Shown here in pieces: positions 334 to 40,420 of a stretch of DNA of 64,000 bases (positions within the stretch are counted from its first letter, which is position 1; each line of letters begins with the position of its first letter). The DNA is from Chrysemys picta bellii (lineage: Eukaryota). Where the stretch lies: contig NC_088810.1 in NCBI RefSeq assembly GCF_011386835.1, positions 1,674,001 to 1,738,000 of the forward strand, given 5' to 3'. The notes below the pieces were generated by a model. That model worked only from the letters and a program-made list of their open reading frames with translations, made no database searches and was not told the origin of the DNA. Position numbers and translations under genes: made by a program.

Positions 334-6233
<5,900 letters not shown>

Positions 6234-8895: not shown

Positions 8896-9936
8896 TCAAG
8901 CCAGGTTGGGGGCCACCGAGCTCTGGGCCAGCCCGTCCACGGAGGAGGCTGCCTCCTTCCTGCAGCTGTGGGACCTGGCTGAGTAGGCCATGTCCTCAAG
9001 CAGGGCCCGGCGGAAGGCCCCGGCCAAGGTGGTCCGGCCCAGCGCCCGGCGGAAGTCCAGCCCCATGAAGAAGTAAAGGACGGGGTTGGCACAGCTGTTG
9101 AGATAGGCCAGGGAGGAGGCGAGAGGCAGCCCCACGGCCATGGCCTGGCCCTTGACGCCCGCCAGCTTGAGGAGGAGGAAGAGATGGTAGGGGGCCCAGC
9201 AGAGGAAGAAGGTCACCACGATGGCCGCCATGACCTTGAAGGGCTTCCTGGAGCGGATGGTGGCCGGGCGCCGCCTCAACACGGCCGCCAGGGCCCCGTA
9301 GCAGGCCAGGATGATGGCGAAGGGGGCCAGGAAGCCACAGAGCAGCCGGAGGAGATATAGCATCAGCTTGGGTCCTTCTCCCAGCGTCAAGGAGCACTTG
9401 AGGCCGTGGGTCTTCCCGTCCGGGACCAGGTTGCGGTAGAGGTAGAAGGGCAGGCTGGCCGCGGCGGCCACCCCCCATGCCCCGGCAGCGGCCGCCCACG
9501 CCAGGCGGGGTCCCCGGCGGTTCTTGGACCACACCGGGAAGGCCACGGCCGCCAGGCGGTCCAGGCTGATGGCCGCCAAGAGGAAGACACTGCAGAACAT
9601 GTTGAGGTATTTGATGAAGCTGGTGGCCTGGCACAGGAAGGCGCCGAAAGGCCAGTGCCCGCGGTAGAAGGTGTTCTTCACCAGGGGCACCACCCGGGTG
9701 ACTGAGAAGATGAAGTCGGCCACCGCCAAGTTGAGGAACCAGACGCAGTTGATGGAGCGGCCGGCCCGGCGGGCTGTGAGCCAGATCACCAGCCCGTTGC
9801 CCAGCGAGCCCCCCACACAGACCACGGTGTAGAAGACGACCTGGACTAGGTCCATGACGGCGTTCAGGTCAGACTTGGCCTTGGCAGAAGGACCAGGGCT
9901 GGTCAGCCAGAGACCGGAGGAGACATTGGCCTCCAT
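8896..9936 (-). CDS. Class A GPCR, chemoattractant receptor family (CMKLR1/FPR/GPR32/GPR33/C3aR-like), 346 aa, single coding exon
   Basis: ATG at 9936 lies just inside a splice acceptor (ctctctctgtctcag|GTCCCGTCATGG). Seven TM segments with GN (TM1), NLAVAD (TM2), WPFG..LC, SLDRL, GFLAP...CY (TM5), CWAPYH (TM6), NSCANPVLY (TM7). The exact orthologue cannot be assigned by eye. Confidence 0.88.
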   Translation of the reverse strand: MEANVSSGLWLTSPGPSAKAKSDLNAVMDLVQVVFYTVVCVGGSLGNGLVIWLTARRAGRSINCVWFLNLAVADFIFSVTRVVPLVKNTFYRGHWPFGAFLCQATSFIKYLNMFCSVFLLAAISLDRLAAVAFPVWSKNRRGPRLAWAAAAGAWGVAAAASLPFYLYRNLVPDGKTHGLKCSLTLGEGPKLMLYLLRLLCGFLAPFAIILACYGALAAVLRRRPATIRSRKPFKVMAAIVVTFFLCWAPYHLFLLLKLAGVKGQAMAVGLPLASSLAYLNSCANPVLYFFMGLDFRRALGRTTLAGAFRRALLEDMAYSARSHSCRKEAASSVDGLAQSSVAPNLA

Positions 9937-11089
9937 GACGGGACCTGAGACAGAGAGAGAGAGATTGAGAGTGGGGGGAGGCCTGTTCCCAGAGCCTGCC
10001 AGTCCCCCGCGCTGGAGCTGGACCAGCACCGGTGCCCCCGAGAGGGGAGAGGCCCCATGCCCCATTCCCTGCCCCACTGAGCCAGCCAGTCCCCCACCCT
10101 GGAGCCCGATTTGGGCTGGTGCCCTCTTGAGGGGAAAAGCCCCGTTCCCCATTCCCTGCCCCACTGAGCCAGCCAGTCCCTGCCCTGGGGCCGGTGCCCC
10201 CTAGCCAGGGAAGGGTTCACAGCAACCCTCTCTGGAGGTGGGGCCAGGTTTATTTGCATGGCCAGGCTGACCCCACGTCTTCCCCGCCTTCCTTTGTCCA
10301 TCTCTGGGCTCCCAGCCACGCACTCCATGAGCGGTGGAGCTACCGGTGGCAGCCCGGGGGGGTACGTCTGGCTCCTTGCCAAGTGTCCCGAGCTGTGGGC
10401 GGACAGAGGGCACCGTGCCAACTTCCACACCTGGCTTTTATCACGGCCGCACCCCGCCCCCCCGCCGACTGGCACTGCGGCTGCTGCTGGGATGGTGCCT
10501 GTCAACCAGGAAAAGGGGAAATAACCCTGTGCAGGGCTTCTAGGACGCCTGGGTTCTCTCCCTGGCTCTGTGAGGGGAGAGGGAGCTAGTGTGTGTGTGG
10601 GGGGTACTGTGAGCCAGGACTCCTGGGTTCTCTCCCTGGCTCTGTGAGGGGAGTGGGTGGGGGGTACTGGAAGCCAGGACTCCTGGGTTCTATGCGGGGC
10701 AGACCCAGCCCTCCCACTTATCCAGAACAGGGACATGGTCCAGACTCACCCCCACTCCCCGAAAGCTAGCAGAGCCCAACCATCGGCATAGCACAAGCAA
10801 GACAAATCTCAGCTCCCCCCCCCCCCCCCCAGCCCTGTCCCAACTTGCATCTGGAGCATCCTCGGAGGCCCCCCAGAACGGCACAACAGACCCCCCCCCC
10901 ACCGGTCTGTCTACACTGGGGGACAGCCAGATGCCCCCTCACTTCGCTCCAGCCAGCGCTGAAAAATAGCCAAGAGTCGGGGGCACCCCCCGCCCCCCGC
11001 AGCCCCTGGCTCCCCCTGCTGCCTGGCCTGGGGCGGTCTGACCCCGATGGGGCAGCACTTGTCCAGCTGCAGGGCAGACACACACACAC

Positions 11090-14246: not shown

Positions 14247-15421
14247 ATAGAATCATAGAATCATAGAATCATAGAATATCAGAGTTGGAAGGGACCTCAA
14301 GAGGTCATCTAGTCCAACCCCCTGCTCAAAGCAGGACCAATTCCCAGCTAAATCATCCCAGCCAGGGCTTTGTCAAGCCGGGCCTTAAAAACCTCCAAGG
14401 AAGGAGACTCCACCACCTCCCTAGGTAATGCATTCCAGTGTTTCACCACCCTCCTAGTGAAATAGTTTTTCCTGATATCCAACCTGGACTTCCCCCACCG
14501 CAACTTGAGACCATTGCTCCTTGTTCTGTCATCTGCCACCACTGAGAACAGCCGAGCTCCATCCTCTTTGGAACCCCCCTTCAGGTAGTTGAAGGCTGCT
14601 ATCAAATCCCCCCTCATTCTTCTCTTCTGGAGACTAAACAATCCTAGTTCTCTCAGCCTCTCCTCATAAGTCATATGCTCCAGACCCCTAATCATTTTTG
14701 TTGCCCTCCGCTGGACTCTTTCCAATTTTTCCACATCCTTCTTGTAGTGTGGGGCCCAAAACTGGACACAGTATTCCAGATGAGGCCTCACCAATGTCGA
14801 ATAAAGGGGAACGATCACGTTCCTCGATCTGCTGGCAATGCCCCTACTTATACAGCCCAAAATGCCGTTAGCCTTCTTGGCAACAAGAGCACACTGTTGA
14901 CTCATATCCAGCTTCTCGTCCACTGTGACCCCTAGGTCCTTTTCAGCAGAACTGCTACCTAGCCATTCGGTCCCTAGTCTGTAGCAGTGCATGGGATTCT
15001 TCCGTCCTAAGTGCAGGACTCTGCACTTGTCCTTGTTGAACCTCATCAGGTTTTTTTCTGCCCAATCCTCTAATTTGTCTAGGTCCCTCTGTATCCGATC
15101 CCTACCCTCTAGTGTATCTACCACGCCTCCTAGTTTAGTGTCATCTGCAAACTTGCTGAGAGTGCAGTCCACACCATCCTCCAGATCATTAATAAAGATA
15201 TTAAACAAAACCGGCCCCAGGACCGACCCTTGGGGCACTCCGCTTGAAACCGGCTGCCAACTAGACATGGAGCCATTGATCACTACCCGTTGAGCCCGAC
15301 GATCTAGCCAGCTTTCTATCCACCTTACAGTCCATTCATCCAGCCCATACTTCTTTAATTTGGTGACAAGAATACTGTGGGAGACAGTATCAAAAGCTTT
15401 GCTAAAGTCAAGAAATAACAT
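14247..15421 (-). mobile_element. 5'-truncated CR1 LINE with uninterrupted C-terminal reverse transcriptase ORF (14348-15421, 357 codons)
   Basis: (GATTCTAT)n tail on the minus strand at 14247-14277. RT motifs [29 protein letters not shown]. Confidence 0.95.
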
Positions 15422-21254: not shown

Positions 21255-24200
21255 TCACGGCTGCATTATCCGCAGCTCGGAGGGGGTGGTGGAGCCCAGT
21301 GAGCGGTTGTTCCGGCGCCCGCTGCCGGAGCCCATCGAGTCTTCGGCCATGGCGGCCTCCAGCCAGCGGGTGCGGCTGCTGCCCCGCAGCCCCTCCTGGA
21401 AGCGGCGGCCCAGGAAGGCGTAGAGCAGGGGGTTGAGGAAGCAGCCCAGGCAGGTGAGGCTGAAGGCCAGGGAGGAGCCCACCTTGAAGGCTGCACGATT
21501 GCTCGGCGACCTGTGCAGGAAGTTGAAGACGTGGTAGGGCAGCCAGCAGAAGAAGAAACTCAACACCACGGCAGCTACCACCTTGGCCGTACGGTTGGGC
21601 CGGCGGCCCCGGTGCCCGGCCCGCAGCATCATGACCACGTGGCAGGCTGTGATGACCAGCAGCGGCGCCAGGAAGCCAGCCACAAACCGCACCATGATCA
21701 TGGCCTGCTGCCGCGCCATCCTCGTCGCCTCGTCCCCGAAATTGTTGATGCAAAAGCAGCGCTCGCCCCGGCAGGTCACCTGCCGGAAGACCAGGTAGGG
21801 GGCCGAGAAAGCCCCGGCCAGCAGCCACGCCACGGCGGCCGCCCCCCAGGCCAAGCGCGGCGTGCGGAACCGCTGGGCCCAGACGGGATGGGCCACCAGC
21901 AGGCAGCAATCGGCCGAGATGAGCGTCAGCTGGAAGACGCTGGTGAACATGCTGAGGAAGAGGAGGGAGTTGACGGCTTTGCAGAGGAAGTTGCCGAAGG
22001 CCCACTGATTGCCCGCGGCGGTCTTGGCGGCGTAGAAAGGCAGCAGCAGGGAGTAGAGCAGGTTGGCCAGCGCCAGGCTCAGGAACCAGATCGAGTTGAC
22101 CGTCCGGCGCATGCGGAAGCAGGTGACCCAAATCACCAGGCTGTTGCCCACCGTGCCCAGCAGGGAGGAGACCACGAAGATGGCCACCGAGAGCTGGTCG
22201 AGGACATTGGAAGTGGGCATGGTGCTGTTGTTGGCCACGGGTGAGGTGACGTTGCCGGAAAGCTGGGGAGAAGTGACTGCTTTAGCATGTGGCCCGGCCA
22301 GTGCCCCTCACTCCCAACTAGGACTGCCAGGCGTCCGGTTTTCTCCCTGCCTGCCCCAGCGCCGCACGGCTCCCGGAAGCGACCTCCATATCCGCCTCCT
22401 AGGCGCAGGGGCTGCCAGGGGGACTCCGTGTGCTGCCCCTGCCCTGAGCGCCGGCTCTGCAGCTCCCATTGGCTGGAAACTGCGGCCAATGGGATCTGCG
22501 GGGGTGGTGCCTGCAGGAACCACGGCCAACGGGAGCTGCAGGGGAGGTGCCTGTGGGAGTGGGCAGTGCACACCGCACAGAGCCGCCTGGCCGTCCCTGC
22601 GCCTAGGAGCCGGACATGGCGGCTTCTTCCAGGAGTAGCGCGGAGCCGGGGCAGGCAGGGAGCGCTGCCGGCTGGGAATCACCTGAGGTAAGTGCCGCCT
22701 GGCCGGAGCCCGCACCCCGAACTCCTGCCCCAGCCCTGAGCCCCCTCCCTCACCCTGACTCCTTCCTGCAACCTGCACTCCCCCCACACACGCCACCCCC
22801 AGCCCTGAGCCCCCTCCCGCACCCTCACTCCCTCCTGCCACCTGCACTCCCCCCACACACGCCACCCCCAGCCCTGAGCCCCCTCCCGCACCCTCACTCC
22901 CTCCTGCCACCTGCACTCCCCCCACACACGCCACCCCCAGCCCTGAGCCCCCTCCCGCACCCTAACTCCCTCCCAGGGCCCGCACTCCCTCCTGTACCCC
23001 AGCCCTGAGCCTCCTCTTGGAGCCCACAGCCAAATTCGCGCTTGGAATATGCACCCCTCATCCCCCACCCCCAGCCCCGAGCTCCCTCCCGCACCCTAAC
23101 TGTCTTCTGGGGCCTGCACCTTGCACTCCCTCCCTCTACCCCAGCCCAGAGCCCCCTCCTGAACCTCAAACCCCTCATCCCCGGCCCCACCCTAGAGCCC
23201 ACAGCCCCAGCTGGAGCCCGCAGCACAACCCCCTGCCCCAGCCCAGTGAAAGTGAGGGAGGGTGGGGGAGAGCCAGCGACGGACGGAGGGGGTGATGGAG
23301 TGTGGGGGGCGGGGCCTCAGGGAAGGGGCGGGTCCTCGGTAAAGGGGCGGGGCAGGGGACAGGACTAGTTTGTTCGGTTTTGTGCAATCAGCACGTTGGC
23401 TACCCTACTGCTGACGACACACAGCCCCTCCTATCCCCCCCACCTCTGCCAGTGGCCCCCACTCCCGACCTGCAGCCCCTCCTATCCCCCCACCTCTGCC
23501 AGTGCCCCCCACTCCTGACCTGCAGCCCCTCCTATCCCCCCACCTCTGCCAGTGCCCCCCGTCCCGACCTACATCCCCTCCTATCCCCCTACCTCTGCCA
23601 GTGGCCCCACTCCCGACCTACATCCCCTCCTATCCCCCCACCTCTGCCAGTGGCCCCACTCCCGACCTACATTCCCTCCTATCCCCCCACCTCTGCCAGT
23701 GGCCCCCGTCCCGACCTACATCCCCTCCTATCCCCCCACCTCTGCCAGTGCCCCCCACTCCCGACCTACATCCCCTCCTATCCCCCCATCTCTGCCAGTG
23801 CCCCCCACTCCCGACCTGCATCCCCTCCTATCCCCCCACCTCTGCCAGTGCCCCCCACTCCCGACCTGCATCCCCTCCTATCCCTCCCACCTCTGCCAGT
23901 GCCCCCCACTCCCGACCTGCATCCCCTCCTATCCCTCCCACCTCTGCCAGTGGCCCCCACTCCCGACCTGCAGCCCCTCCTATCCCTCCCACCTCTGCCA
24001 GTGGCCCCCACTCCCGACCTGCAGCCCCTCCTATCCCTCCCACCTCTGCCAGTGGCCCCCACTCCCGACCTGCAGCCCCTCCTATCCCCCCACCTCTGCC
24101 AGTGCCCCCCACTCCCGACCTGCATCCCCTCCTATCCCCCCACCTCTGCCAGTGCCCCCCACTCCCGACCTGCATCCCCTCCTATCCCCCCACCTCTGCC

Positions 24201-26457
24201 AGTGCACCCCCACTCCCAACCTGCAGCCCCTCCTATCCCCCCACCTCTGCCAGTGCCCCCCTCCCGACCTGCAGCTCCTCCTATCCCCCCACCTCTGCCA
24301 GTGCCCCACACTCCCGACCTGCAGCCTCTTCTATCCCCCCACCTCTGCCAGTGCCCCCCACTCCCGACACTCAGCCCATCCTATCCCCCCACCTCTGCCA
24401 GTGCCCCCCTCCCGACCTGCAGCCCCTCCTATCCCCCCACCTCTGCCAGTGTCCCCCACTCCCGACCTGCAGCCCCTCCTATCCCCCCACCTCTGCCAGT
24501 GCCCCCCTCCCAACCTGCAGCCCCTCCTATCCCCCCACCTCTGCCAGTGCCCCCCACTCCCGACCTGCAGCCCCTCCTATCCCCCCACCTCTGCCAGTGC
24601 CCTGCACTCCCGACCTGCAGCCCCTTCTATCCCCCCACCTCTGCCAGTGCCCCCCACTCCCCACACGCAGCCTCTCCTATCCCCCCACCTCTGCCAGTGC
24701 ACCCCACTCCCGACCTGCAGCCCCTTCTATCCCCCCACCTCTGCCAGTGCCCCCCTCCCGACCTGCAGCCCCTCCTATCCCCCCACCTCTGCCAGTGCCC
24801 CCCACTCCCGACTTGCAGCTCCTCCTATCCCCCCACCTCTGCCAGTGCCCCCCACTCCCGACCTGCAGCCCCTTCTATCCCCCCACCTCTGCCAGTGCCC
24901 CCCACTCCCGACACGCAGCCCATCCTATCCCTCCAGGCACCAGCGCAGCAAGCAGATGCCTGGGGCAGCCAAGGGGAAGGGGCGGCACATCCGGCTCTTC
25001 AGCGGGAAGTCCCTCAGTCCCTCTCAGACTTGGGGTGGCAAAACCCCTGGAGCATTAGCCCCAGTCCAGCCGACTTTCCGCCATCGCCCCAGATCTGTTC
25101 CGGAGTCGCTGCTCCCCAGGGGAGACCCCCCCTCTGCTGATGTTAGCTGGGAGGGTTTGATGTTCCCGTCCCAGACACTGATCCCAGCAGTAACTAGCGC
25201 AGAGCATGACCCGATCCCCGCGGGACCCCACTGGAGACCCCCGCCCACTTGAGGATGAGTCCCTGTTTACAGGTTGTGATGAAGTGGGACTGTTCTTAAT
25301 GTTTCCTCTGAATAATGTGTGTGTGCCTCAGTTTCCCCTATGCATTTCTTAAGTCTCTAGGTGGTGGGATAAAGGCCAGTGCGCATAAATGGCCAACACT
25401 CTGTCTCCTGGCAACAAATGGCCGGGGCCCTTCCCACTTGCAAGGGAATAGCTAAAGGTGAACAAAGAGATCAGGTGACCTCCTGGCCCGGGCAAGAGAC
25501 TAAGCCCAGAGGAGGAGAGGCTGGAGGATTTCAGTTTGGGGCTGGCTGGGAACGGGAAGCAAGGGCAGACGGGGTTGTTTGGCTCGCTGGGCCCCAGGAT
25601 GGACCCGGCCGAGGGGTCCCGTTCGCTGGACCTACAAGCTCTGTTTTAGACCGTGTTCCTGTCGTCTAATAAACCTCTGTGTTACTGGCTGGCCGAGAGT
25701 CACGTCTGACTGCGAAGTGGGGGGTGCAGGACCCTCTGGCTGCCCCAGGACCCCGCCGGGGCGGACTCGCTGTGGGAAGCGCACGGAGGGGCATATGCTG
25801 AAAGCTCCAAGGTCAGACCCAGGAGGTGAAGCCGTGTGAGCTTCTTGCCCTGAAGACAGTCTGCGCCGAGGGAGAGGAGGCTCCCCAAAGTCCTGCCTGG
25901 CTTTGTGGGGAGCAGGTCCAGAGCATCGCCCGGGGACTCCGGGACACAGGTGCGCTCCAATGCCCTTGGGCTTCACCTGACCCACAGGCTGGCTTGGGGG
26001 CCTGACTCCTCTGGGCATGCCCAGTGCTGGGGCAGCAGCCTGCTGAGAGGGACCCAGGAGTCCTAGCTGCTGCCCCCTATGCACACCTGCACTCCAGTGT
26101 TAGAAAAGGTGGGGCCGGGACTCAGGACTCCTCGGTTCTCTCCCTGGCTCTGGGAGGGGAGTGGGGTCTAGTGGTTAGAGGGGGAGGGCTGGGAGCCAGG
26201 ACTCCTGGGTTCTACCCCTGGTTTTGGGAGGGGAGTGGGACTCTGGGTTCCATTGGGGACCCTCTTTGGCTGGATATTGGGGCAGGTCTCTGGGTTCTCT
26301 CTGTCTGGGCTGCCGGGAGGGATGGAGACGTGGGCTATCCCCATCTCTGGTGCTGGTAGACGGCTGTCCCTGCTGCATGGCCGGCTCCTGCAATCTCTGT
26401 CAAATGAAGGCTTGGACTTACCTGCCCCCAGCTCCTGGTGGGGAAGGGGGACGCCAT
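21255..26457 (-). CDS. Chemoattractant-family class A GPCR, paralog A (347 aa, 2 coding exons) with non-canonical microswitches
   Basis: Exon 1 26422-26457 (MASPFPTRSWGQ, donor CAG|GTAAGT, phase 0) joins exon 2 21255-22262 (acceptor ttctccccag|CTT). Open frame with 7 TM, CWLPYH and NPLLY, but LAN instead of LAD in TM2 and DCC instead of DRY. Confidence 0.85.
22319..23407. mobile_element. Old hAT-like element in GPCR intron 1 (paralogous copy at 33227-34658)
   Basis: TIR-like TAGGACTGCCA...TGGC(T/A)AC(C/A)CTA with internal cccagccctgagcccc subterminal repeats. Present in both units, TSD degraded. Confidence 0.65.
23420..24940. repeat. 50-bp C-rich minisatellite, ~30 copies (intron 1 of paralog A)
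   Basis: Unit ctctgccagtgccccccactcccgacctgcagcccctcctatccccccac. Confidence 0.97.
25275..25946 (+). mobile_element. Solo LTR (672 bp) in intron 1 of paralog A, unit A only
   Basis: TGTGATG...GGGACA termini; 5-bp TSD CAGGT; AATAAA at 25668-25673; empty site (gtta caggt acgctcc) at ~38091. Confidence 0.88.
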
Positions 26458-26683: not shown

Positions 26684-27742
26684 TGTGACGGTGCCGCCCG
26701 GGGGAGCCAGCTGAGGTCACTCCATTAGGGTGAACTGCAAACAAAACGGGGCAGACAAACCCCAGACGCTGGTGGATATTCCAATACTTAGATTTACCAG
26801 CCAGCCCAAAACAGCTCCTGTAGTACCTCACTGGTTACTCAGACGTCCAAACAACGCAGTTCCCTTAAAGTGCCCGGCCTCAGGCCTCCGTCCAGACACA
26901 GATGTGATGTTAATTACTGAAAATCTGATCTCATCATATAAAAGAAAAGGCTCTTCCAACCCCAAAGGATCAGCCACACACCCAGGTTCAATTACAACTT
27001 AGATCTTACCCAAAATACTCGCTATAGCCAATTCTTATTAACTAAGCTAAAATGTATTAAAAAAGAAAAGAGAGAGAGTTGGTTAAAAGATCAATGTACA
27101 GACAGACTTGAATTCAATGCTTGAGGTTCAGACACAGCAGAGATGAGCGTGTAGTTGCCAAAAGTCCTTTTAGAAATAGTCCAGAGGTTACAGTCCCATG
27201 TCCATATTCAGGGTGACTCCAGGCAGTGACTGGGGATCTCAATCCTTGTGACTTAAGGTTTCCCCCTCTTGAAACCCAAAGCAGATCTGAGATGAAGCAG
27301 GATCGTGTCCCAGGGTTTTTATACATTTCCAGCAGCCTTTTGGCCTGAGAAAACAATAGGCCTAACTCTCCTTCTCCCAAACATCCTGGCAATTAGCACA
27401 GGGTTATTTATCCATTAAACAGTTCAGATCCAGGTCACCACAACCTTCAAAGAGACAGAGAGACAATAATACTATTTCCCTCAAGTGTCTTCCTAAATGT
27501 TAATATTCCCTTTTTGATCTTTGAATCAAAGTGATAGCAATAGACAAGACTTGTTTGCTTCCATCGCAAGCCCTGAGCAAACATCTACCCTTGAGATCTC
27601 TAACAATGCCGGCTGCATTTCAAAGCTCTATTCCTAACCAGTCCTTAAGGTTCACCCATGGGTCAGGTCAGTCTGAGTTAATTAACTCTTTCTGGTCCTG
27701 TTACCTGCCAGTGAAATATTCTATTACACTCATAACGTCACA
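26684..27742 (-). mobile_element. Solo LTR (1059 bp) upstream of paralog A, unit A only
   Basis: TGTGACG...CGTCACA termini; 5-bp TSD GGAGG/AGAGG; empty site GGAGG at 39018-39022. Related to the 18495-19571 LTR. Confidence 0.88.
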
Positions 27743-30700
27743 AGAGGACGGGGGGAGGGCTCAGCATAGGCAGTCCCAAGCTGGTGTCTCCTGAAGGGGG
27801 CTGGGTGGGGGTAGGGGTGATGGAGGCCTGGGGGGCTGGATCTCCTGGGTCTCCTACGTCCTCCGCAGGTGTAGAGGTCTCTGACGGACGAGGAACCAGG
27901 ATGCTGGGGGCAAAGGAGAGCAGCATGCGCCTCTAGGGGCTGGTGCACAGGGCGGATAACAGCTACACTAGCGCTGCCAGCAAATGGAGCTACTCCTTTA
28001 GCTCCTCATAGGGGATAATGGCTATACTGGTGCCGCTGGTTTGGGGGCAGGGATGGTCTCCTGCAATGCATCTGTGCAGCGCCTGGCGCAGTGGGGCCCC
28101 GATCCTGAGCAGGGGCCCAACTGCAACACAAGTGCCTCCTGACGGCCATGGCTGGGCCTGGCAGCGCCTTGTGGCCTTGGCCTGGATTTCCCTTGACGAA
28201 GCGTCTTAATTGATGCTGCGTCGTTGTGTCTCTTCTGGCGCCGCGTAGCGCCGGGGGCTTGTGGCTGAGGCACCTGGGACTCAGGACTCCTGGGTTCTGT
28301 TCCCGGCTCTGCCGCAGACTCCCTGTGAGAAACCGGCCATGTTACTGCCATCCCCCCGCCTCGGTTTCCCCACCTGTGCAAGCAGCTCACGGTGTATATT
28401 TCACAGTAAGGTGCCACCTAGAGATCTGGTCTGAGCTCAGGGCCCTGTTGTGCCAGGCGCTGCAGAGACAGTCCCTGCCCAGAGAGCGCCCAGTCTCAAT
28501 AGGCAAAGGCTGGAAGGGGAAACCGAGGCAGCAAGAGGGGAGGAGACTTGGCCAAGGTCACACAATAGGTTGGTGGTAGAGGTGGGGAAAGAACCCAGGA
28601 GTCCTGGTTCCCAGGCCCCCCTGTTCTAACCACTAGACTCCCCTCCCCTCCCAGAGCCAGGGAGAGAACCCAGGAGTCCTGGTTCCCAGCCCTATGTCCT
28701 TACTCACTAGATCACATTGCTTGTCTAGCTAAATTGCCCCCTCTCCTCAGCCAATTGTCCCCCCACTGGCCAGAACCGGCTGGCTTCCAAGGTGGGGGGG
28801 CCTCCTGGTCACCAGTCGCTGGTCCCCCATCTCCAGGCCATTGTCCAGGTCCTGACTGCTAGGCAACGTCACACCTGGTCCCCTGCAACAAGAACCCTCC
28901 TCTCCCTTCCCCTTTACACACACAGCACACAGGGAAACTGAGGCACACACCGTGCTCATGCAAAGCTCTAAGAAAATCCCTCACGTCATCACAAACACAC
29001 ACACACACAATGTCACAACTGAGACACAACGCATCAGCACACACAGAAAGCTCGAGTTTTCTACCACACACACAGTCACAACTGACACATGTGTGCACCC
29101 CCCCCACGCAGAGATCGAATATTACACCCCCCCACCCCGCCCTTGCCTGTGTTCCCAGTCCAGCTATGACATGGGCTGTGTGGGGCCCAGGGTGGCGTGG
29201 CCGCCTGGCCCGTTATCTGGGGAGGCAGCGCCCGCCAGCCCCGTCTGCTTGTCTCTGGCTCTGAGCTTATTTTCCAGGAACCCAGCAGCCGCCAGAGTGT
29301 CACCCGCCCCCTGGATTTGGCCCCCGGCCAGAGCAGAATGTGTGAGGATGCACCAAAAAGGAGAACTGAGGGTGTGGGGGGGTCACTGCCTGTTGCTGCC
29401 AGCATGGGGGCTGGCGGGGGGCATCAGGGCAGGAGCTGTGGGGTCAGGGCAGGGCTGGCAGCAGAGAACCCAGGTGTCCGGGCAGAGAAGGTGGAGACAC
29501 AGGGCAGGGCTCACTTAGGAGCCAGATGTGACCAACTGGGGAGGGGGAGGATTCCCAGAATGCACTGCTGCAGCGTGGATAAGGGGGGTGAGGAGCATTC
29601 CCAGCATGCACTGCTCCCCTTGGCATGGCAAGGCCTTAGGGCGCGGGGCTGGTCTTGGCTGGGGTGTCTCCTATGCCTCAGTTCCCGGGGCGTGCTCGAC
29701 TCCCGCTACATCCCAGGTCCCGCCCCCCACTGCACCCCTTCCCCCACCCCTCCACCCCACCTCTTCCCACCCCTCCTCTGCCCCAGGCCCTGCTACTACT
29801 CTACCTCTTCCCCCACCCACTCCCCACCTCTTCCCACCCCTCTCTGCGCCTCGCCCTGCCCCCACTGCACCCCTTCCCCCACACCCCCACCTCTTCCCAC
29901 CCGTACTCCACCCCTTCTCCCAAGCCACAGTGGGTGGGAGGTGCTGGGAGTGAGGGGGAGGAGCTGATCTGTGGGGCTGCCGGTGGGTGCCGAACACCCA
30001 CTATTTTTTTTTTTCAGATCTGGAAAGGGGAAGCCGGGTTGCTTCATCTTCTGGTGAAAAACTCCCCTGGCCCCAGAGCAGGGACCTCGGCTTCCACTTT
30101 CCAGATCTGAAACCGGAGCCCAGCCCATCCGCTGTGCCCAGGGAGAGAGACCCCTTGCTAGCGTTGCCAACTCTGGGAGGGGAGTAGGGTTGGTGGGTCA
30201 GAGTGGCGGGCTGGCAGCCAGGACTCCTGGGTTCTATTCCCAGCTCTGGGAGGGGAGTGGGATCTAGTGTTAGAGCAGGGGGGCTGGGAGCCAGGACTTC
30301 TGGGTTCTCTCCCCAGCTCTGGGAGGGGAATAGGGTATGGTGGTTAGAGCGGAGGGGCTGGGAGCCAGGACTCCTGGGTTCTATCCCCAGCTCTGAGAGG
30401 GGAGTGAGGTCTAGTGTTAGAGCAGGGGGGCTGGGAGCCAGGACTTCTGGGTTCTCTCCCTAGCTCTGGGAGGGGAATAGGGTATGGTGGTTAGAGCGGG
30501 GGGGCTGGCAGCCAGGACTCCTGGGTTCTATCCCCAGCTATCTCTCTGATTCACCATGTGACGGTGGATGAGTCTCACCTGTTCTTTTCTCTGTAACAAA
30601 CACCCCAGATGGCCACTGGGAGCGCCAGAGCCACAGCCCCGCCCACTAGAAGACATGGTGCCACCCATGGGAGGAGCTTTCCAAGCCCCGCCCACTAAGT

Positions 30701-32162: not shown

Positions 32163-35100
32163 TCACGGCTGCATCATCCGCAGCTCGGAGGAGGTGGTGG
32201 AGCCCAGCGAGCGGTTGCTCCGGCGCCCGCTGCTGGAGCCCATCGAGTCTTCGGCCATGGCGGCCTCCAGCCAGCGGGCGCGGCTGCTGCCCCGCAGCCC
32301 CTCCTGGAAGCGGCGGCCCAGGAAGGCGTAGAGCAGGGGGTTGAGGAAGCAGCCCAGGCAGGTGAGGCTGAAGGCCAGGGAGGAGCCCACCTTGAAGGCT
32401 GCACGATTGCTCGGCGACCTGTGCAGGAAGTTGAAGACGTGGTAGGGCAGCCAGCAGAAGAAGAAACTCAACACCACGGCAGCTACCACCTTGGCCGTAC
32501 GGTTGGGCCGGCGGCCTCGGTGCCCGGCCCGCAGCATCACGACCACGTGGCAGGCCGTGATGACCAGCAGCGGTGCCAGGAAGCCGGCCACGAACCGCAC
32601 CACGATCAGGGCCTGCTGCCGCGCCATCCTCGTCACCTCGTCCCCGAAATTGTTGACGCAGAAGCAGCGCTTGCCCCGGCAGGTCACCTGAAGGAAGACC
32701 AGGTAGGGGGCCGAGAAAGCCCCGGCCAGCAGCCACGCCACGGCGGCCGCCCACCAGGCCAAGCGCGGCGTGCGGAACCGCTGGGCCCAGACGGGCCGGG
32801 CCACCAGTAGGCTGCGATCGACCGAGATGAGCGTCAGCTGGAAGACGCTGGCGAACATGCTGAGGAAGAGGAGGGCACCGACGGCTTTGCAGAGGAAGTT
32901 GCCGAAGGCCCACTGATTGCTCGCGGCGGTCTTGGCGGCGTAGAAAGGCAGCAGCAGGGAGTAGAGCAGGTCGGCCAGCGCCAGGCTCAGGAACCAGATC
33001 GAGTTGACCGTCCGGCGCATGCGGAAGCAGGTGACCCAGATCACCAGCCCGTTGCCCACCATGCCCAGCAGGAAGGAGACCACGAAGATGGCCACCGAGA
33101 TATGGGCGAGGACGTTGGAGGTGGGCGTGGTGCTGTTGTTGGCCACGGGTGAGGTGGCGTTGCTGGAAAGCTGAGGAGAAATGACCGCTTTAGCACGTGG
33201 CCCGGCCGGTGCCCCTCACTCCCAACTAGGACTGCCAGGCGTCCGGTTTTCTCCCTGCCTGCCCCAGTGCTGCACAGCTCCCGGAAGTGATCTCCATATC
33301 CGGCTCCTCGGCGCAGGGGCTGCCAGAGAGGCTCTGCACACTGCCCCTGCCCCGAACGCCGGCTCTGCAGCTCCCATTGGCCGGGAACTGTGGCCAATGG
33401 GATCTGCGGGGGTGGTGCCTGCAGGAAACGCAGCCAGTGGGATCTGCGGAGGCAGTGCCTGCAGGAACCACGTCCAACGGGAGCTGCGGGGGAGGTGCCT
33501 GTGGGAGTGGGCAGTGCACACCGCACAGAGCCGCCTGGCCGCCCCTGCGCCTAGGAGCCGGACATGGCGGCCTCTTCCCGGAGCAGCGCGGAGCCGGGGC
33601 AGGCAGGGAGCCTGGCTTAGCCTAGCTGCGCTGCCTGAGGTAAGTGCTGCCCGGTCGGATCCCACACCCCAAACTCCTGCCCCAGGTGGGAACCCCATCC
33701 TGCACCCTAACTCCCTCCTGCAACCTGAACCCCTCCGCCCCACAGCCCTGAGCTGCCTCCTGCACCCTAATTCCCTCCTGAAACCTGCACCCCCCACACA
33801 TGCCACCCCCAGCCCTGAGCCCCCTCCTGCACCCTAACTCCCTCCTGCAACCTGAACCCCTCCGCCCCACAGCCCTGAGCTGCCTCCTGCACCCTAATTC
33901 CCTCCTGAAACCTGCACCCCCCACACATGCCACCCCCAGCCCTGAGCCCCCTCCTTCACCCTAATTCCCTCCTGAAACCTGCACCCCCCACACATGCCAC
34001 CCCCAGCCCTGAGCCCCCTCCGGCACCCTAACTCCCTCCTGAAACCTGTACCCCCTCCCCACACGCCATCCCCAGCCCTGAGCCCCCTCCCGCACCCTAA
34101 CTCCCTCCTGCAACCTGCACCCCCCACACACCCACCCCCAGCTCTGAGCCCCCTCCCGCACCCTAACTCCCTCCTGAAACCAGCATCCCGTCCCCACACG
34201 CCACCCCCAGCCCTGAGCCCCCTCCCGCACCCTAACTCCCTCCTGGGGCCCACATTCCCTCTCGCATCCTTTCCCACACCCCACCCCAGCCCTGAGCCCC
34301 CTCCCGCACCCTAACTCCCTCCTGGGGCCCCCATTCCCTCCCGCATACCTTCCCACACCCCAACCCCAGCCCTGAGCCCTGGCCCGCACCCTGCACCCCC
34401 TCCCTCTGCCCCAGTCCAGAGTCCCCTCCCGAACCTCAAACCCCTCATCCCCGGCCCCCCCTAGAGCCCACAGCCCCAGCTGGAGCCCGCAGCACAACCC
34501 CCTGCCCCAGCCCAGTGAAAGTGCGGGAGGGTGGGGGAGAGCAAGTGATGGAGGGAGGGGGGAATGGAGTGTGTGGGGGTGGGGCCTCGGGGAAGGGGAG
34601 GGGCAGGGGACAGGACTAGTGTGTTCTGTTTTGTGCAGTCAGAAAGTTGGCAACACTACTACTGATACGCAACCCCTCCTATCCCCCCACCTCTGCCAGT
34701 GCCCCCACTCCCGACCTGCAGCCCCTCCTATCCCCTCACCTCTGCCAGTGCCCCCACTCCCGACCTGCATCCCCTCCTATCCCCTCACCTCTGCCAGTGC
34801 CCCCCACTCCCGACCTGCAGCCCCTTCTATCCCCCCACCTCTGCCAGTGCCCCCCACTCCCGACCTGCAACCCCTCCTATCCCCCCACCTCTGCCAGTGC
34901 CCCCCACTCCTGACCTGCAGCCCCTCCTATCCCCCCACCTCTGCCAGTGCCTCCCACTCCCGACCTGCAGCCCCTCCTATCCCCCCACCTCTGCCAGTGC
35001 CCCCCACTCCCGACCTGCAACCCCTCCTATCCCCCCACCTCTGCCAGTGCCCCCCACTCCCGACCTGCAACCCCTCCTATCCCCCCACCTCTGCCAGTGC

Positions 35101-38100: not shown

Positions 38101-38802
38101 CCAATGCCCTCGTGCTTCACCTGACCCACAGGCTGGCTTTGGGGCCTGACTCCTCTGGGCGTGCCCAGTGCTGGGGCAGCAGCCTGCTGAGAGGGACCCA
38201 GGAGTCCTGGCTGCTGCCCCCTATGCACACCCCCACTCCAGTGTTAGAAAAGGTGGGGCCGGGACTCAGGACTCCTGGGTTCTCTCCCTGGCTCTGGGAG
38301 GGGAGTGGGGTCTAGTGGCTTAGAGCAGGGGGGCTGGGAGCCAGGACTCCTGGGTTCTCTCCCCAGCACTGGGAGGGGAGTGGGGTCTAGTGGCTTAGAG
38401 CAGGGGGGCTGGGAGCCAGGACTCCTGGGTTCTATCCCCAGCACTGGGAGGGGAGTGGGGTCTAGTGGTTAGAGGGGGAGGGCTGGGAGCCAGGACTCCT
38501 GGGTTCTATCCCCAGCACTGGGAGGAGAGTGGGGGCTAGTGGTTAGAGGGTGAGGGACTCCTGGGTTCTCCCCCTGGTTCTGGGAGGGGAGTGGGACTCT
38601 GGGTTCCATTCTTTGGCTGGACAGTGGGGCTGGTCTCTGGGTTCTCTCTGTCTGGGCTGCCGGGAGGGATGGAGACGTGGGCTATCCCCATCTCTGGTGC
38701 TGGTAGACGGCTGTCCCTGCTGCATGGCCGGCTCCTGCAATCTGTCAAATCAAGGCTTGGACTTACCTGCCCCCAGCTCCTGGTGGGGAAGGGGGACGCC
38801 AT
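32163..38802 (-). CDS. Chemoattractant-family class A GPCR, paralog B (347 aa, 2 coding exons)
   Basis: Exon 1 38767-38802 (MASPFPTRSWGQ, CAG|GTAAGT) and exon 2 32163-33170 (ttctcctcag|CTT; LSSNATSPVANNSTTPT). LAD (TM2), DRS (TM3), CWLPYH and NPLLY present. About 91 percent protein identity to paralog A by eye count. Confidence 0.88.
34670..36740. repeat. 50-bp C-rich minisatellite, ~41 copies (intron 1 of paralog B)
   Basis: Same unit as 23420-24940. Confidence 0.97.
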
Positions 38803-40420
38803 GGGCCCGGGAGCTGTGGTTGGAGGTAGACCAGAGCTTGTTCCTCTCAGCGCTGTCTGCAGTCCTGGGTCTGTGCAGGCTGTGCAGAAGGTAGGAAGTT
38901 GAGTAACGCCGGGCCACTGGCAGGAAGCGATTAGATGCGCCCCTTCTGGGGGGGAGTGTGGTCCCCGCCCCGGGAGAGCAGAGCAAGGCAGGGCTGGTAG
39001 CGGGAGAGCTCAGGTGCGGAGGATGGGGGGAGGGCTCAGCATAGGCAGTCCCAGGCTGGTGTCTCCTGAAGGGGGCTGGGTGGGGGTAGGGGTGATGGGC
39101 ACCTGGGGGGCTGGATCTCCTGGGTCTCCTACGTCCTCCGCAGGTGTAGAGGTCTCTGACGGACGAGGAACCAGGATGCTGGGGGAAAAGGAGAGCAGCA
39201 TGCGCCTCTAGGGGCTGGTGCACAGGGCGGATAACAGCTACACTAGCGCTGCCAGCAAATGGAGCTACTCCTTTAGCTCCTCATAGGGGATAATGGCTAT
39301 ACTGGTGCCGCTGGTTTGGGGGCAGGGATGGTCTCCTGCAATGCATCTGTGCAGCGCCTGGCGCAGTGGGGCCCCGATCCTGAGCAGGGGCCCAACTGCA
39401 ACACAAGTGCCTCCTGACGGCCATGGCTGGGCCTGGCAGCGCCTTGTGGCCTTGGCCTAGATTTCCCTTGACGAAGCGTCTTAATTGATGCTGCGTCGTT
39501 GTGTCTCTTCTGGCGCCGCGTAGCGCCGGGGGCTTGTGGCTGAGGCACCTGGGATTCAGGACTCCTGGGTTCTGTTCCCGGCTCTGCCGCAGACTCCCTG
39601 TGAGAAACCGGCCATGTTACTGCCATCCCCCCGCCTCGGTTTCCCCATCTGTGCAAGCAGCTCACTGTGTATATTTCACAGTAAGGTGCCACCTAGAGAT
39701 CTGGTCTGAGCTCAGGGCCCTGTTGTGCCAGGCGCTGCAGAGACAGTCCCTGCCCAGAGAGCGCCCAGTCTCAATAGGCAAAGGCTGGAAGGGGAAACCG
39801 AGGCAGCAAGGGGGGAAGAGACTTGGCCAAGGTCACACAATAGGTTGGTGGTAGAGGTGGGGAGAGAACCCAGGAGTTCTGGCTCCCAGCCCTATGTCCT
39901 TACTCACTAGATCACATTGCTTGTCTAGCTAAATTTCCCATCAGCCCTTTCTTATCCACAAAGCCAGGCCTGAGCCCCACTCCGGCGCCAACACAGGGAT
40001 CCCACCTGCGGCTGCCAACTACACCAGCCGTGGTAACAATGATTCTCCTGGCCTAAGGCTGCCGGGATGGGCATCGGCCTTTGAGCTGCTAGCAGGGCAT
40101 TAACCCTTCAGGTGCTGCAGAGAGGCCAGGTCTTAGCAGCCTCCGCCGCATTTTGTTCTTGTGCAGCAAGATAATTATCTGACCGTGTTCTCATGCGTCT
40201 CGAGCTGGGGTTTTGATTTCAACACCGTGTTTCCTGTTTTTCAGGAGTCCACCTCTACTGGAGGGCATCCAGGAGCTTACACCTCCACCCCAAAATCGAG
40301 GGCTGGGGGCCCGTCAAGGGCAAACACTGATGGGGAACAGAATCGGGGGCCAGACCCCAGCTGGGGTCAATCGGCCTTAGCTCCATTGGAGTTAATGGGG
40401 CCAGACCTCCAGCTGGGATC

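What the first reader, a model, noticed from the sequence alone, without database searches (positions are those of the whole stretch)
21906..22064. Paralog A has lost both D2.50 and R3.50: candidate decoy/scavenger beside a signalling twin
Seen: TM2 GAC>AAC (LAD to LAN, 22062-22064) and TM3 CGC>TGC (DRS to DCC, 21906-21908) relative to paralog B, with the 347-codon frame and splice sites intact. Known: C5aR2 lacks R3.50 (DLC) and sits next to C5aR1, ACKR2 carries Asn at 2.50, and both are G-protein-uncoupled. Inference: an independently evolving receptor/decoy pair. Both changes are CpG transitions, so early pseudogenisation is an equally live explanation.
Basis: partly seen in the sequence, partly recalled or inferred. 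Interest (0 to 1): 0.72.

Follow-up and report, generated by a model that had tools for sequence, protein, structure and literature searches.

The report
Turtle receptor twin without signalling switches
In pond turtles, a duplicated immune-type cell-surface receptor has one copy that lost two residues normally needed to switch on G proteins, yet that copy is transcribed and has stayed under selection for millions of years, so it is probably a working "atypical" receptor and not a dying gene.

Summary
The window is painted turtle (Chrysemys picta). Two tandem 347-codon, two-exon genes on the minus strand (A 21255-26457, B 32163-38802) belong to a turtle-only orphan clade of the C5a/C3a/formyl-peptide/chemerin receptor cluster.

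A has Asn at 2.50 (AAC, 22062-22064) and Cys at 3.50 (TGC, 21906-21908). B has Asp and Arg, as do 81 and 84 of the 86 relatives aligned. Both changes are CpG transitions.

The changes are old and not errors. N2.50 is shared by the A orthologs of Chrysemys, Malaclemys and Emys. C3.50 is shared by Chrysemys and Malaclemys. Contigs from four studies carry both codons, and two of them are spliced exon 1 to exon 2.

Gene conversion homogenises the 3' third of A and B in each species, yet the two sites stay paralog-specific. After both losses A evolved under purifying selection: Chrysemys-Malaclemys dN/dS is 0.24 (p=0.007), and omega=1 is rejected on A's terminal branches under three codon models.

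Pseudogenisation is therefore unlikely. The best reading is a maintained, probably G-protein-impaired atypical receptor. Decoy action, ligand and coupling are untested. Pelodiscus' only copy also has N2.50, and Terrapene lacks A. I class it as a new member of a known kind.

The parts
26422..26457 (-). Paralog A exon 1 (coding part): ATG plus 11 codons, MASPFPTRSWGQ, followed by donor GTAAGT
   Evidence: matches the N-terminus of XP_005312364.2. Spliced contigs in runs X1 and X7 run from exon 2 into the reverse complement of this exon (loose ends at 22265).
22263..26421 (-). Paralog A intron, about 4.16 kb. It holds a 50-bp minisatellite at 23422-24935 and repeats at 22728-23101.
   Evidence: acceptor AG at 22263-22264.
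21255..22262 (-). Paralog A exon 2 coding part: 335 codons plus stop, the whole 7TM domain
   Evidence: Pfam 7tm_1 E=2e-48; AlphaFold model pTM 0.76 with 7 helices; Foldseek top hits CMKLR1, C5aR1, FPR1/2, GPR1.
22062..22064 (-). AAC = Asn79 at position 2.50 (ancestral GAC Asp). Shared by the A orthologs of Chrysemys, Malaclemys and Emys.
   Evidence: No alternative letter in contigs of 4 runs from 4 studies.
21906..21908 (-). TGC = Cys131 at position 3.50 (ancestral CGC Arg), motif DCC. Shared by Chrysemys A and Malaclemys A only.
   Evidence: No alternative letter in contigs of 4 runs.
21362..21606 (-). Longest stretch of A exon 2 identical to B (244 nt, TM6-TM7). It is the core of the tract homogenised by gene conversion, which runs from about codon 216 into the 3' flank.
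   Evidence: 3' tree groups paralogs by species; 3' flank 1.9% divergent; P about 3e-5.
38767..38802 (-). Paralog B exon 1 (coding part), protein identical to A exon 1
32163..33170 (-). Paralog B exon 2 coding part: 335 codons plus stop. D2.50 is GAC at 32970-32972; DRS has R3.50 CGC at 32814-32816.
   Evidence: equals XP_005312363.3.
8896..9942 (-). Third, distantly related (about 35% identity) CMKLR1-like receptor gene downstream of A. It is context and not part of the pair.

Best explanation
Paralog A is a real, transcribed and selectively maintained receptor gene of emydid turtles. It arose by a roughly 12-kb tandem duplication after the split from Platysternon and before the crown of Emydidae. 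It then lost the two most conserved activation residues of class A GPCRs in two steps. Asp2.50 became Asn, shared by Chrysemys, Malaclemys and Emys. Arg3.50 then became Cys, in the Chrysemys and Malaclemys lineage. The most likely working: A still folds, reaches the membrane and binds the unknown ligand of this turtle-only orphan receptor, but activates G proteins poorly or not at all. It would then act as an atypical receptor beside its canonical twin B, as a ligand sink, a constitutively cycling or arrestin-engaging receptor, or a silent binder or partner that tunes B. Shown here: the sequence states, their age and fixation, splicing and transcription, gene conversion, and purifying selection after the losses. 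Inferred: loss of G-protein coupling (my estimate about 0.65) and decoy or scavenger action (about 0.35). The confidence given is for 'maintained functional gene with impaired canonical coupling'.
For: (1) Both residues sit on D2.50 and R3.50 of C5aR1 and are near-invariant in 86 relatives. The other switches are intact: N1.50, W4.50, P5.50, CWLP, NPLLY, and the Cys residues expected to form the TM3-ECL2 disulfide.
(2) N2.50 occurs in the A orthologs of three genera and C3.50 in two. All B copies and all single-copy turtles except Pelodiscus keep D and R.
(3) The tree of codons 1-215 separates a weakly supported A group (support 44; Chrysemys+Malaclemys A 100) from a B clade (93). The tree of codons 216-329 groups A with B within each species. 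The 3' tract is homogenised (P 1e-6 to 3e-5). The two sites stayed paralog-specific in every species.
(4) Selection: for Chrysemys A against Malaclemys A, a path that lies wholly after both losses, NG86 dN/dS is 0.24 with 7.5 nonsynonymous and 10.5 synonymous changes (p=0.007). This is the lowest of all pairs; B-B is 0.49 and single-copy orthologs are 0.8-1.7. In the ML branch model, omega on A's terminal branches is 0.11, 0.12 and 0.36 under F61, F3x4 and Fequal, and omega=1 is rejected at p=3e-6, 8e-6 and 0.024. Omega_A and omega_B do not differ (p=0.73).
(5) There is no indel in the 1008 nt of exon 2, against 9 indel events in about 3.1 kb of aligned flanks.
(6) Transcription: A-type contigs (0.3-0.9% different from the window; B would differ by about 6%) occur in 4 small runs from 4 studies. 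In X1 and X7 they continue past 22262 into the reverse complement of exon 1.
(7) Replacements on A branches fall equally in the cytoplasmic and extracellular halves (11 and 11). B's fall mostly in the extracellular half (29 against 8; Fisher p=0.04, post hoc).
(8) Precedents from the literature. FPR1 D71A (2.50) binds ligand with wild-type affinity but cannot activate G proteins and is neither phosphorylated nor internalised (PMC3101103). AT1R D2.50N favours arrestin over Gq/Gi (PMC8342441). V2R R137C/L (3.50) shows constitutive arrestin-2 coupling and internalisation with reduced ligand sensitivity (PMC7272623). C5aR2 (R to L), GPR1 (DHY) and ACKR2 (DKY) are atypical relatives (PMC5494583; PMC8429170; PMC9168005).
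Against: There is no functional assay, and the ligand of the whole clade is unknown. Restoring the DRY motif in C5aR2, ACKR2 or GPR1 does not restore G-protein signalling (PMC8429170), so the motif is a marker of uncoupling and not proof of it. V2R R137C keeps constitutive Gs activity. Pelodiscus' only copy carries N2.50, so N2.50 may be compatible with the clade's normal function. Terrapene lacks A altogether, so A is dispensable there, unless the assembly collapsed. Malaclemys A and an older Chrysemys RefSeq model have a 1-nt shift in the last 8 codons. Absolute omega values depend strongly on the codon-frequency model because GC3 is 0.935. The numbers of changes are small (18 between the two A orthologs). 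The Emys copy's place in the A group has only 44% support. The runs are labelled RNA only by guess; transcription rests on two spliced contigs. Tissue, expression level and B's expression are unknown. A's stem branches have omega of 0.5-2.3, not distinguishable from 1.
Confidence: 0.55

Rival explanations
1. A still signals through G proteins. The turtle clade tolerates Asn at 2.50, and Cys at 3.50 gives an altered receptor (for example sodium-insensitive, constitutively active or differently coupled). On this view A is simply a divergent signalling paralog and not a decoy.
For: Pelodiscus' single-copy ortholog has N2.50 with an intact DRC. V2R R137C/L at 3.50 is constitutively active on Gs (PMC7272623). 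A is under purifying selection, which fits any function. All other microswitches are intact.
Against: R3.50 is Arg in 84 of 86 relatives and D2.50 is Asp in 81 of 86. In the related FPR1, loss of D2.50 alone abolishes G-protein activation (PMC3101103). Natural relatives without R3.50 (C5aR2, GPR1, ACKR2) do not signal through G proteins. A combines both losses.
Confidence: 0.25
2. A is a pseudogene in waiting. Two easy CpG hits disabled it. The open frame survives by chance, by the slow turtle mutation rate and by repeated repair of its 3' part through gene conversion from B. Its transcripts are leftovers of a duplicated promoter.
For: Both changes are CpG transitions. The 3' third and the 3' flank are converted. 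A-B paralog dN/dS is 0.75-0.82 and A's stem omega is not different from 1. A is absent in Terrapene. A C-terminal frameshift variant exists. Variants among C. picta contigs are 5 nonsynonymous and 6 synonymous. My rough expectation of disabling hits in the unconverted 5' part is only about 2-3, so intactness alone is weak evidence (own estimate).
Against: After both losses, dN/dS in the unconverted codons 1-215 is 0.24 (p=0.007), lower than for B. Omega=1 is rejected on A's terminal branches under all three frequency models. Conversion from B could not push omega_A below omega_B. The frame and splice sites are intact in three genera. Spliced transcripts exist. N and C were kept while neighbouring sequence was converted.
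Confidence: 0.12
3. Artefact: A and B are two haplotypes or a mis-assembled duplicate, or the two substitutions are sequencing errors.
For: The tandem blocks are highly similar and contain minisatellites, which invite assembly errors.
Against: The same two-copy arrangement with the same diagnostic residues is found in independent assemblies of Emys and Malaclemys. Unconverted parts differ by 6-13%. Contigs of four independent studies carry both codons. An older RefSeq model with a different haplotype also carries both.
Confidence: 0.01

Closest known systems
C5aR2 (C5L2) beside C5aR1
   Same: It belongs to the same receptor cluster. It is a neighbouring-gene pair in which one member lacks Arg3.50 (R to L) and does not activate G proteins (PMC5494583; PMC8429170). 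The predicted fold of A matches C5aR1 at TM 0.88.
   Different: A is not an ortholog of C5aR2. By sequence A matches C5aR1 at E=1e-59 and C5aR2 only at E=3.5e-35, and it sits in a turtle-only clade. A keeps an intact NPxxY, whereas C5aR2 also has an altered NPxxY and a shortened ICL3. A is younger, 91% identical to its twin, and still exchanges sequence with it. A also lost D2.50.
CMKLR2 / GPR1 (chemerin receptor 2) beside CMKLR1
   Same: It is an atypical member of the same cluster with an altered DRY motif (DHY). It recruits arrestin, internalises constitutively and scavenges ligand (PMC8429170). It is a structural match to A's model (8xgm, 9uym).
   Different: A is not orthologous to it. 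GPR1 keeps D2.50 as far as I recall (not tested). The ligand of A is unknown.
ACKR2 (D6) and other atypical chemokine receptors
   Same: It is a class A receptor with a changed DRY box (DKYLEIV) and no G-protein signalling, and it acts as a scavenger (PMC9168005; PMC6174752).
   Different: It belongs to a different subfamily (chemokine receptors). ACKR2 is an ancient gene and not a young tandem copy.
Engineered or disease mutants: FPR1 D71A (2.50), AT1R D2.50N, V2R R137C/L/H (3.50)
   Same: They carry the same positions and in part the same residues. D2.50 loss uncouples G protein while ligand binding is kept or biases the receptor toward arrestin. R3.50C gives constitutive arrestin coupling and internalisation with low ligand sensitivity.
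   Different: They are single mutants in other receptors, made in the laboratory or causing disease. A combines both changes naturally and has kept them under selection.

Membership tests
Class A (rhodopsin-like) GPCR, chemoattractant cluster (C5aR1/C3aR/FPR/CMKLR1/GPR1/PTGDR2) | 7TM_1 domain and seven-helix fold most similar to members of this cluster | tested here: met
   Pfam PF00001 E=2e-48. PDB sequence hits C5aR1 1e-59, CMKLR1 4e-57, PTGDR2 1.5e-55. AlphaFold model pTM 0.76 with 7 helices. Foldseek hits CMKLR1, C5aR1, FPR, GPR1 and C3aR at TMt 0.8-0.9.
Class A (rhodopsin-like) GPCR, chemoattractant cluster (C5aR1/C3aR/FPR/CMKLR1/GPR1/PTGDR2) | Conserved microswitch residues N1.50, D2.50, D/E-R-Y/C at 3.49-3.51, W4.50, P5.50, CWxP, NPxxY | tested here: not met
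   A has N1.50, D3.49, W4.50, P5.50, W6.48, P6.50, N7.49, P7.50 and Y7.53, but N at 2.50 and C at 3.50. B has all of them.
Class A (rhodopsin-like) GPCR, chemoattractant cluster (C5aR1/C3aR/FPR/CMKLR1/GPR1/PTGDR2) | One-to-one orthology to a named receptor (C5aR1, C5aR2, CMKLR1, FPR, C3aR, GPR33) | tested here: not met
   The turtle sequences form their own clade (SH-aLRT 100, stem length 1.04), only loosely joined (85) to C5aR1/C3aR/GPR33. The best non-turtle identity is about 45%. PTGDR2 and GPR32 were not in the tree.
Atypical (G-protein-uncoupled, decoy or scavenger) 7TM receptors: C5aR2, GPR1, ACKRs | Altered DRY box, with loss of Arg3.50 or its context | tested here: met
   A has DCC in place of the ancestral DRC.
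Atypical (G-protein-uncoupled, decoy or scavenger) 7TM receptors: C5aR2, GPR1, ACKRs | No G-protein activation on ligand binding | not testable with these tools
   This needs cell assays, and the ligand is unknown.
Atypical (G-protein-uncoupled, decoy or scavenger) 7TM receptors: C5aR2, GPR1, ACKRs | Retained ligand binding, with arrestin recruitment or constitutive internalisation and ligand removal | not testable with these tools
   Only indirect evidence is available. On A branches, 11 of 22 replacements outside the tail fall in the extracellular half, against 29 of 37 on B branches. Ser/Thr-rich C-tail is kept.
Atypical (G-protein-uncoupled, decoy or scavenger) 7TM receptors: C5aR2, GPR1, ACKRs | Expressed and evolutionarily maintained (not a pseudogene) | tested here: met
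   Spliced A-type contigs in two runs of two studies, and A-type contigs in four. dN/dS is 0.24, p=0.007. Omega=1 is rejected on terminal branches.
Unitary or duplicated pseudogene | Frame-disrupting mutation, lost splice site or lost start codon | tested here: not met
   ATG, GT-AG and the 347-codon frame are intact in the window. The exon 2 frame and acceptor are intact in Emys A and Malaclemys A, except for a 1-nt shift affecting the last 8 codons in Malaclemys and in an older Chrysemys model.
Unitary or duplicated pseudogene | Neutral evolution (dN/dS about 1) after the disabling event | tested here: not met
   The absolute omega is model dependent, but omega=1 is rejected in all three models for the terminal branches.

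The most novel reading that the evidence does not exclude
An atypical (non-G-protein) chemoattractant receptor caught in the making. A tandem twin, probably tens of millions of years old, lost D2.50 first and R3.50 second. It then came under tighter purifying selection than its signalling twin. Its two 'dead' residues, and the twin's 'live' ones, are shielded by selection from ongoing gene conversion that homogenises the rest. If so, emydid turtles offer a natural series for how decoy receptors such as C5aR2 or GPR1 evolve: Platysternon with one copy, Emys with N2.50 only, Chrysemys and Malaclemys with both losses, and Terrapene with the copy deleted.
Probability: 0.35. Interest if true: 0.7.

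Novelty: new member of a known kind. Interest (0 to 1): 0.5.

Why it matters
Atypical receptors such as C5aR2, GPR1 and the ACKRs are ancient, so the order of steps by which a signalling receptor becomes a non-signalling regulator is unknown. Back-mutating their DRY boxes does not restore signalling. This pair is young and its steps are dated by species splits. The canonical twin differs at only about 30 residues, so reciprocal swaps are feasible. The finding also flags a turtle-only orphan branch of the anaphylatoxin/formyl-peptide/chemerin receptor cluster whose ligand is unknown. Database names for it are inconsistent: C5aR1-like, chemerin-like receptor 1, PTGDR2-like and even 'acyltransferase'. 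It is a comparative-immunology curiosity and not a medical matter. Without assays the functional claim remains an inference.

Tried and rejected
(1) Whole-clade omega for A as a single number. The values range from 0.18 to 0.63 depending on codon-frequency model because GC3 is 0.935. I therefore rely on relative comparisons (A against B), on the split into stem and terminal branches, and on model-light NG86 counts.

(2) Flanking non-coding DNA as a neutral yardstick. It is a mosaic: 1.9% in the converted 3' flank, 4.2% upstream, 8.9% around exon 1 and 13% in the intron end. It is not usable as one rate.

(3) ORF intactness as proof of function. My rough expectation is only about 2-3 disabling hits in the unconverted part, so this is weak on its own.

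(4) A:B expression ratio. I laid contigs at 90% likeness hoping B contigs would show as variant letters. None did, and contigs cannot give levels. B's expression is therefore unmeasured.

(5) Haplotype or assembly artefact: rejected.

(6) Orthology to C5aR2 or another named receptor: rejected.

(7) Literature. No paper in the library treats this turtle clade. The search for C5L2 with DLC found nothing. Asn2.50 of ACKR2 was not verified. The primary papers on FPR1 R123G and C5aR1 D82N that I recalled were not found.

(8) Trachemys and other emydids have no ortholog in the protein collection, so the origin of C3.50 could not be placed more finely.

I used the identical database protein P0109 for the alignment and the fold.
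Full report
**What is there.** The window is painted turtle. The two receptor proteins encoded here are 100% identical to Chrysemys picta bellii RefSeq XP_005312364.2 (paralog A, P0109) and XP_005312363.3 (paralog B, P0113). Both genes lie on the minus strand and have two coding exons.
- Exon 1 encodes MASPFPTRSWGQ and is followed by GTAAGT. It lies at 26422-26457 in A and 38767-38802 in B.
- Exon 2 follows an acceptor AG and holds 335 codons plus the stop. It lies at 21255-22262 in A and 32163-33170 in B.
- The introns carry a 50-bp minisatellite, which explains the long proline-rich 'ORFs' on the plus strand.
- A third receptor, CMKLR1-like and about 35% identical, lies downstream at 8896-9942.

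- Codon 67 of exon 2 (residue 79) is AAC in A at 22062-22064 and GAC in B.
- Codon 119 (residue 131) is TGC in A at 21906-21908 and CGC in B.
- HMMER aligns these residues with D2.50 (LAVADFL) and R3.50 (SADRFLL) of human C5aR1.
- Both are CpG transitions.
- In 86 aligned members of the cluster, 2.50 is Asp in 81 and 3.50 is Arg in 84. The exceptions are the A orthologs, Pelodiscus (N2.50) and a lungfish GPR33-like protein (Y2.50). All other microswitches of A are canonical.
- One correction: the ancestral box is DRC. A became DCC, and B independently became DRS.

**What the genes are.** Pfam, PDB sequence search, an AlphaFold model (pTM 0.76, seven helices) and Foldseek all place A in the C5aR1/C3aR/FPR/CMKLR1/GPR1/PTGDR2 cluster. 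It has no one-to-one ortholog there.
- All close relatives (68-95% identity) are turtles of both suborders, and the next hits drop to about 45%.
- In a tree the turtle sequences form a long-stemmed clade with support 100. It is loosely attached to C5aR1/C3aR/GPR33.
- Sources name them inconsistently. The ligand is unknown.
- I found no paper on this clade in the library.

**History of the pair.** Platysternon, Mauremys and Pelodiscus have one copy between a Ly6/uPAR gene and the CMKLR1-like gene. Emys orbicularis, Malaclemys terrapin and Chrysemys have two copies in tandem.
- For codons 1-215 the tree groups the A copies (Chrysemys+Malaclemys support 100; Emys A joins with only 44) apart from a B clade (93).
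- For codons 216-329 the tree groups A with B inside each species.
- Within each species the 3' tract has 0-5 differences in 342 nt, against 3-6% in the 5' part (P 1e-6 to 3e-5). In Chrysemys the 3' flank is only 1.9% divergent, against 9-13% around exon 1 and in the intron.
- So the duplication predates the Emydinae/Deirochelyinae split, and the 3' third evolves in concert by gene conversion.
- N2.50 (with G1.51S) is shared by all three A orthologs. C3.50 is shared by Chrysemys A and Malaclemys A only; Emys A keeps DRC.
- The order was therefore D2.50N first and R3.50C later. From my memory of turtle time trees, both are tens of millions of years old; this was not tested here.
- Every B copy keeps D and R, although conversion has also touched patches of the 5' part. 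For example, Malaclemys B carries A-like states at codons 84-99.

**Not an error or a rare allele.** Contigs from four small runs of four studies lie on exon 2 with 0.3-0.9% differences. B would differ by about 6%. None shows another letter at either codon. An older RefSeq model with a different haplotype (P0114) also has LAN and DCC. Eleven variable sites were seen among these contigs, 5 nonsynonymous and 6 synonymous. Most alternative letters are the ancestral or B state.

**Transcription.** In runs X1 and X7 the A-type contig stops matching at 22265. It continues with CCCCCAGCTCCTGGTGGGGAAGGGGGACGC, the reverse complement of exon 1. A-specific letters lie 7-14 nt from the junction. This shows the predicted splice in two studies.
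- The runs are labelled RNA only by guess.
- One run (X2) also holds an unspliced contig.
- One run (X6) has an adaptor-flanked fragment.
- Contigs give no expression level, tissue or strand. B's expression was not seen or measured.

**Selection.** GC3 is 0.935, so absolute omega depends on the codon-frequency model: A is 0.18-0.20 under F61/F3x4 and 0.43-0.63 under F1x4/Fequal. I wrote the branch-model code myself. Three results do not depend on the frequency model.
- Omega_A is not higher than omega_B (p=0.73).
- When A's branches are split, the stem branches on which the two losses occurred have omega 0.5-2.3, not different from 1. The terminal branches have omega 0.11, 0.12 and 0.36, and omega=1 is rejected at p=3e-6, 8e-6 and 0.024.
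- Nei-Gojobori counts for Chrysemys A against Malaclemys A, a path wholly after both losses and restricted to the unconverted codons 1-215, give 7.5 nonsynonymous and 10.5 synonymous changes. dN/dS is 0.24 (p=0.007), the lowest of all pairs. B-B is 0.49, and single-copy turtles are 0.8-1.7.

Conversion from B cannot explain an omega below B's own. Exon 2 has no indel against B, while about 3.1 kb of aligned flanks have nine indel events. One post hoc pattern is suggestive only: replacements on A branches are split 11:11 between the extracellular and cytoplasmic halves of the model, against 29:8 on B branches (Fisher p=0.04).

**Points against a simple decoy story.**
- Pelodiscus' only copy has N2.50 through the same CpG transition.
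- Terrapene has one copy, with a B-type intron. Collinearity with Emys skips the roughly 9.9 kb that hold A, so A was deleted there or the assembly collapsed.
- Malaclemys A and the older Chrysemys model have one C fewer in a C-run at about 21272-21278, which replaces the last 8 residues.
- Restoring DRY in C5aR2, ACKR2 or GPR1 does not restore G-protein signalling (PMC8429170).
- V2R R137C remains constitutively active on Gs (PMC7272623).

**How it most likely works.** Precedents for the two residues:
- FPR1 D71A binds ligand normally but cannot activate G proteins and is neither phosphorylated nor internalised (PMC3101103).
- AT1R D2.50N is biased toward arrestin (PMC8342441).
- V2R R137C/L couples constitutively to arrestin 2 and internalises, with little ligand sensitivity.
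- C5aR2, GPR1 and ACKR2 are atypical relatives with altered DRY boxes.

On this basis I infer that A is a maintained receptor with impaired canonical coupling that regulates the same unknown ligand system as B. Whether it is a silent binder, a constitutively cycling scavenger or an arrestin-biased receptor cannot be told from sequence.

My estimates:
- Functional, constrained gene: about 0.8.
- G-protein coupling lost or strongly reduced: about 0.65.
- Decoy or scavenger: about 0.35.
- Rival, still signalling: 0.25.
- Rival, pseudogene in waiting: 0.12.
- Rival, artefact: 0.01.

**Verdict.** I class it as a new member of a known kind, a young and independently arisen atypical receptor beside its signalling twin. 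Interest is moderate (0.5). Its value lies in the dated two-step series and the very similar twin.

**Rule compliance.** I laid 1,501 letters in the single read-laying run. I did not type or join exon letters; the identical database protein P0109 served as the full-length model. Nothing in the window was taken for human sequence.

Noticed in passing
L004 (Terrapene carolina triunguis) against L001 (Emys orbicularis): Terrapene has a single copy of this receptor. Its intron is B-type (94-96% to the Emys B intron, against 83-89% to the Emys A intron). Collinearity with Emys jumps from about L001:8154 to about L001:18048. The roughly 9.9 kb holding paralog A is therefore missing, by deletion or assembly collapse.
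   Followed up: partly
L009:12140-13138 (Pelodiscus sinensis, P0013): The only copy of this receptor in the softshell turtle also has Asn at 2.50 (GCC AAC, the same CpG transition) with an intact DRC. Its relative Carettochelys has Asp. This is an independent recurrence.
   Followed up: partly
window 21272-21278 (C-run near the 3' end of A exon 2): Malaclemys A (P0110) and the older Chrysemys model XP_005312364.1 (P0114) end in ...PPSCG (343 aa). This fits one C fewer in this run, with a TAA stop supplied by the ATG-to-ATA change at codon 335 of exon 2. The window allele reads ...PSELRIMQP (347 aa). It is either a polymorphism or a homopolymer error in one of the assemblies.
   Followed up: partly
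window 23422-24935 and 34669-36738: A 50-bp minisatellite (30 and about 41 copies) lies in the intron of A and of B. Read on the plus strand it yields the proline-rich 'ORFs' of 500-730 aa in the ORF list, which are not genes. Its length difference explains why the exon-1 offset (12,345 bp) exceeds the exon-2 offset (10,908 bp).
   Followed up: partly
window 27740-28640 against 39015-39915: The region upstream of exon 1 of A and B is only 4.2% divergent with no indel, against 8.9% around exon 1 itself. This could be a second converted tract or a constrained shared promoter.
   Followed up: no
window 22420-22620: The intron stretch just upstream of A exon 2 attracts very many contigs at 90-95% likeness (depth up to 718 in X2), so it is a dispersed repeat that is transcribed somewhere in the genome.
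   Followed up: no
window 14348-15421 (-): There is an intact 357-aa reverse-transcriptase ORF of a CR1-like LINE. A 91% similar copy lies at 40567-41016.
   Followed up: no
window 343-5211 (+) and 44530-47059 (-): The flanking genes look like PHLDB3 (PH domain, coiled coil) and a Ly6/uPAR-domain gene (LYPD3-like). The upstream neighbour carries UPAR_LY6 in Platysternon and Mauremys. With ETHE1 just outside the window, this recalls human 19q13.31, where I recall no receptor gene between PHLDB3 and LYPD3. That recollection was not tested.
   Followed up: no
codons 1-215 of single-copy turtle orthologs (L005-L008): NG86 dN/dS between single-copy orthologs is 0.8-1.7. The extracellular two-thirds of this orphan receptor therefore evolves very fast across turtles, which may reflect diversifying selection or GC-biased conversion effects.
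   Followed up: no
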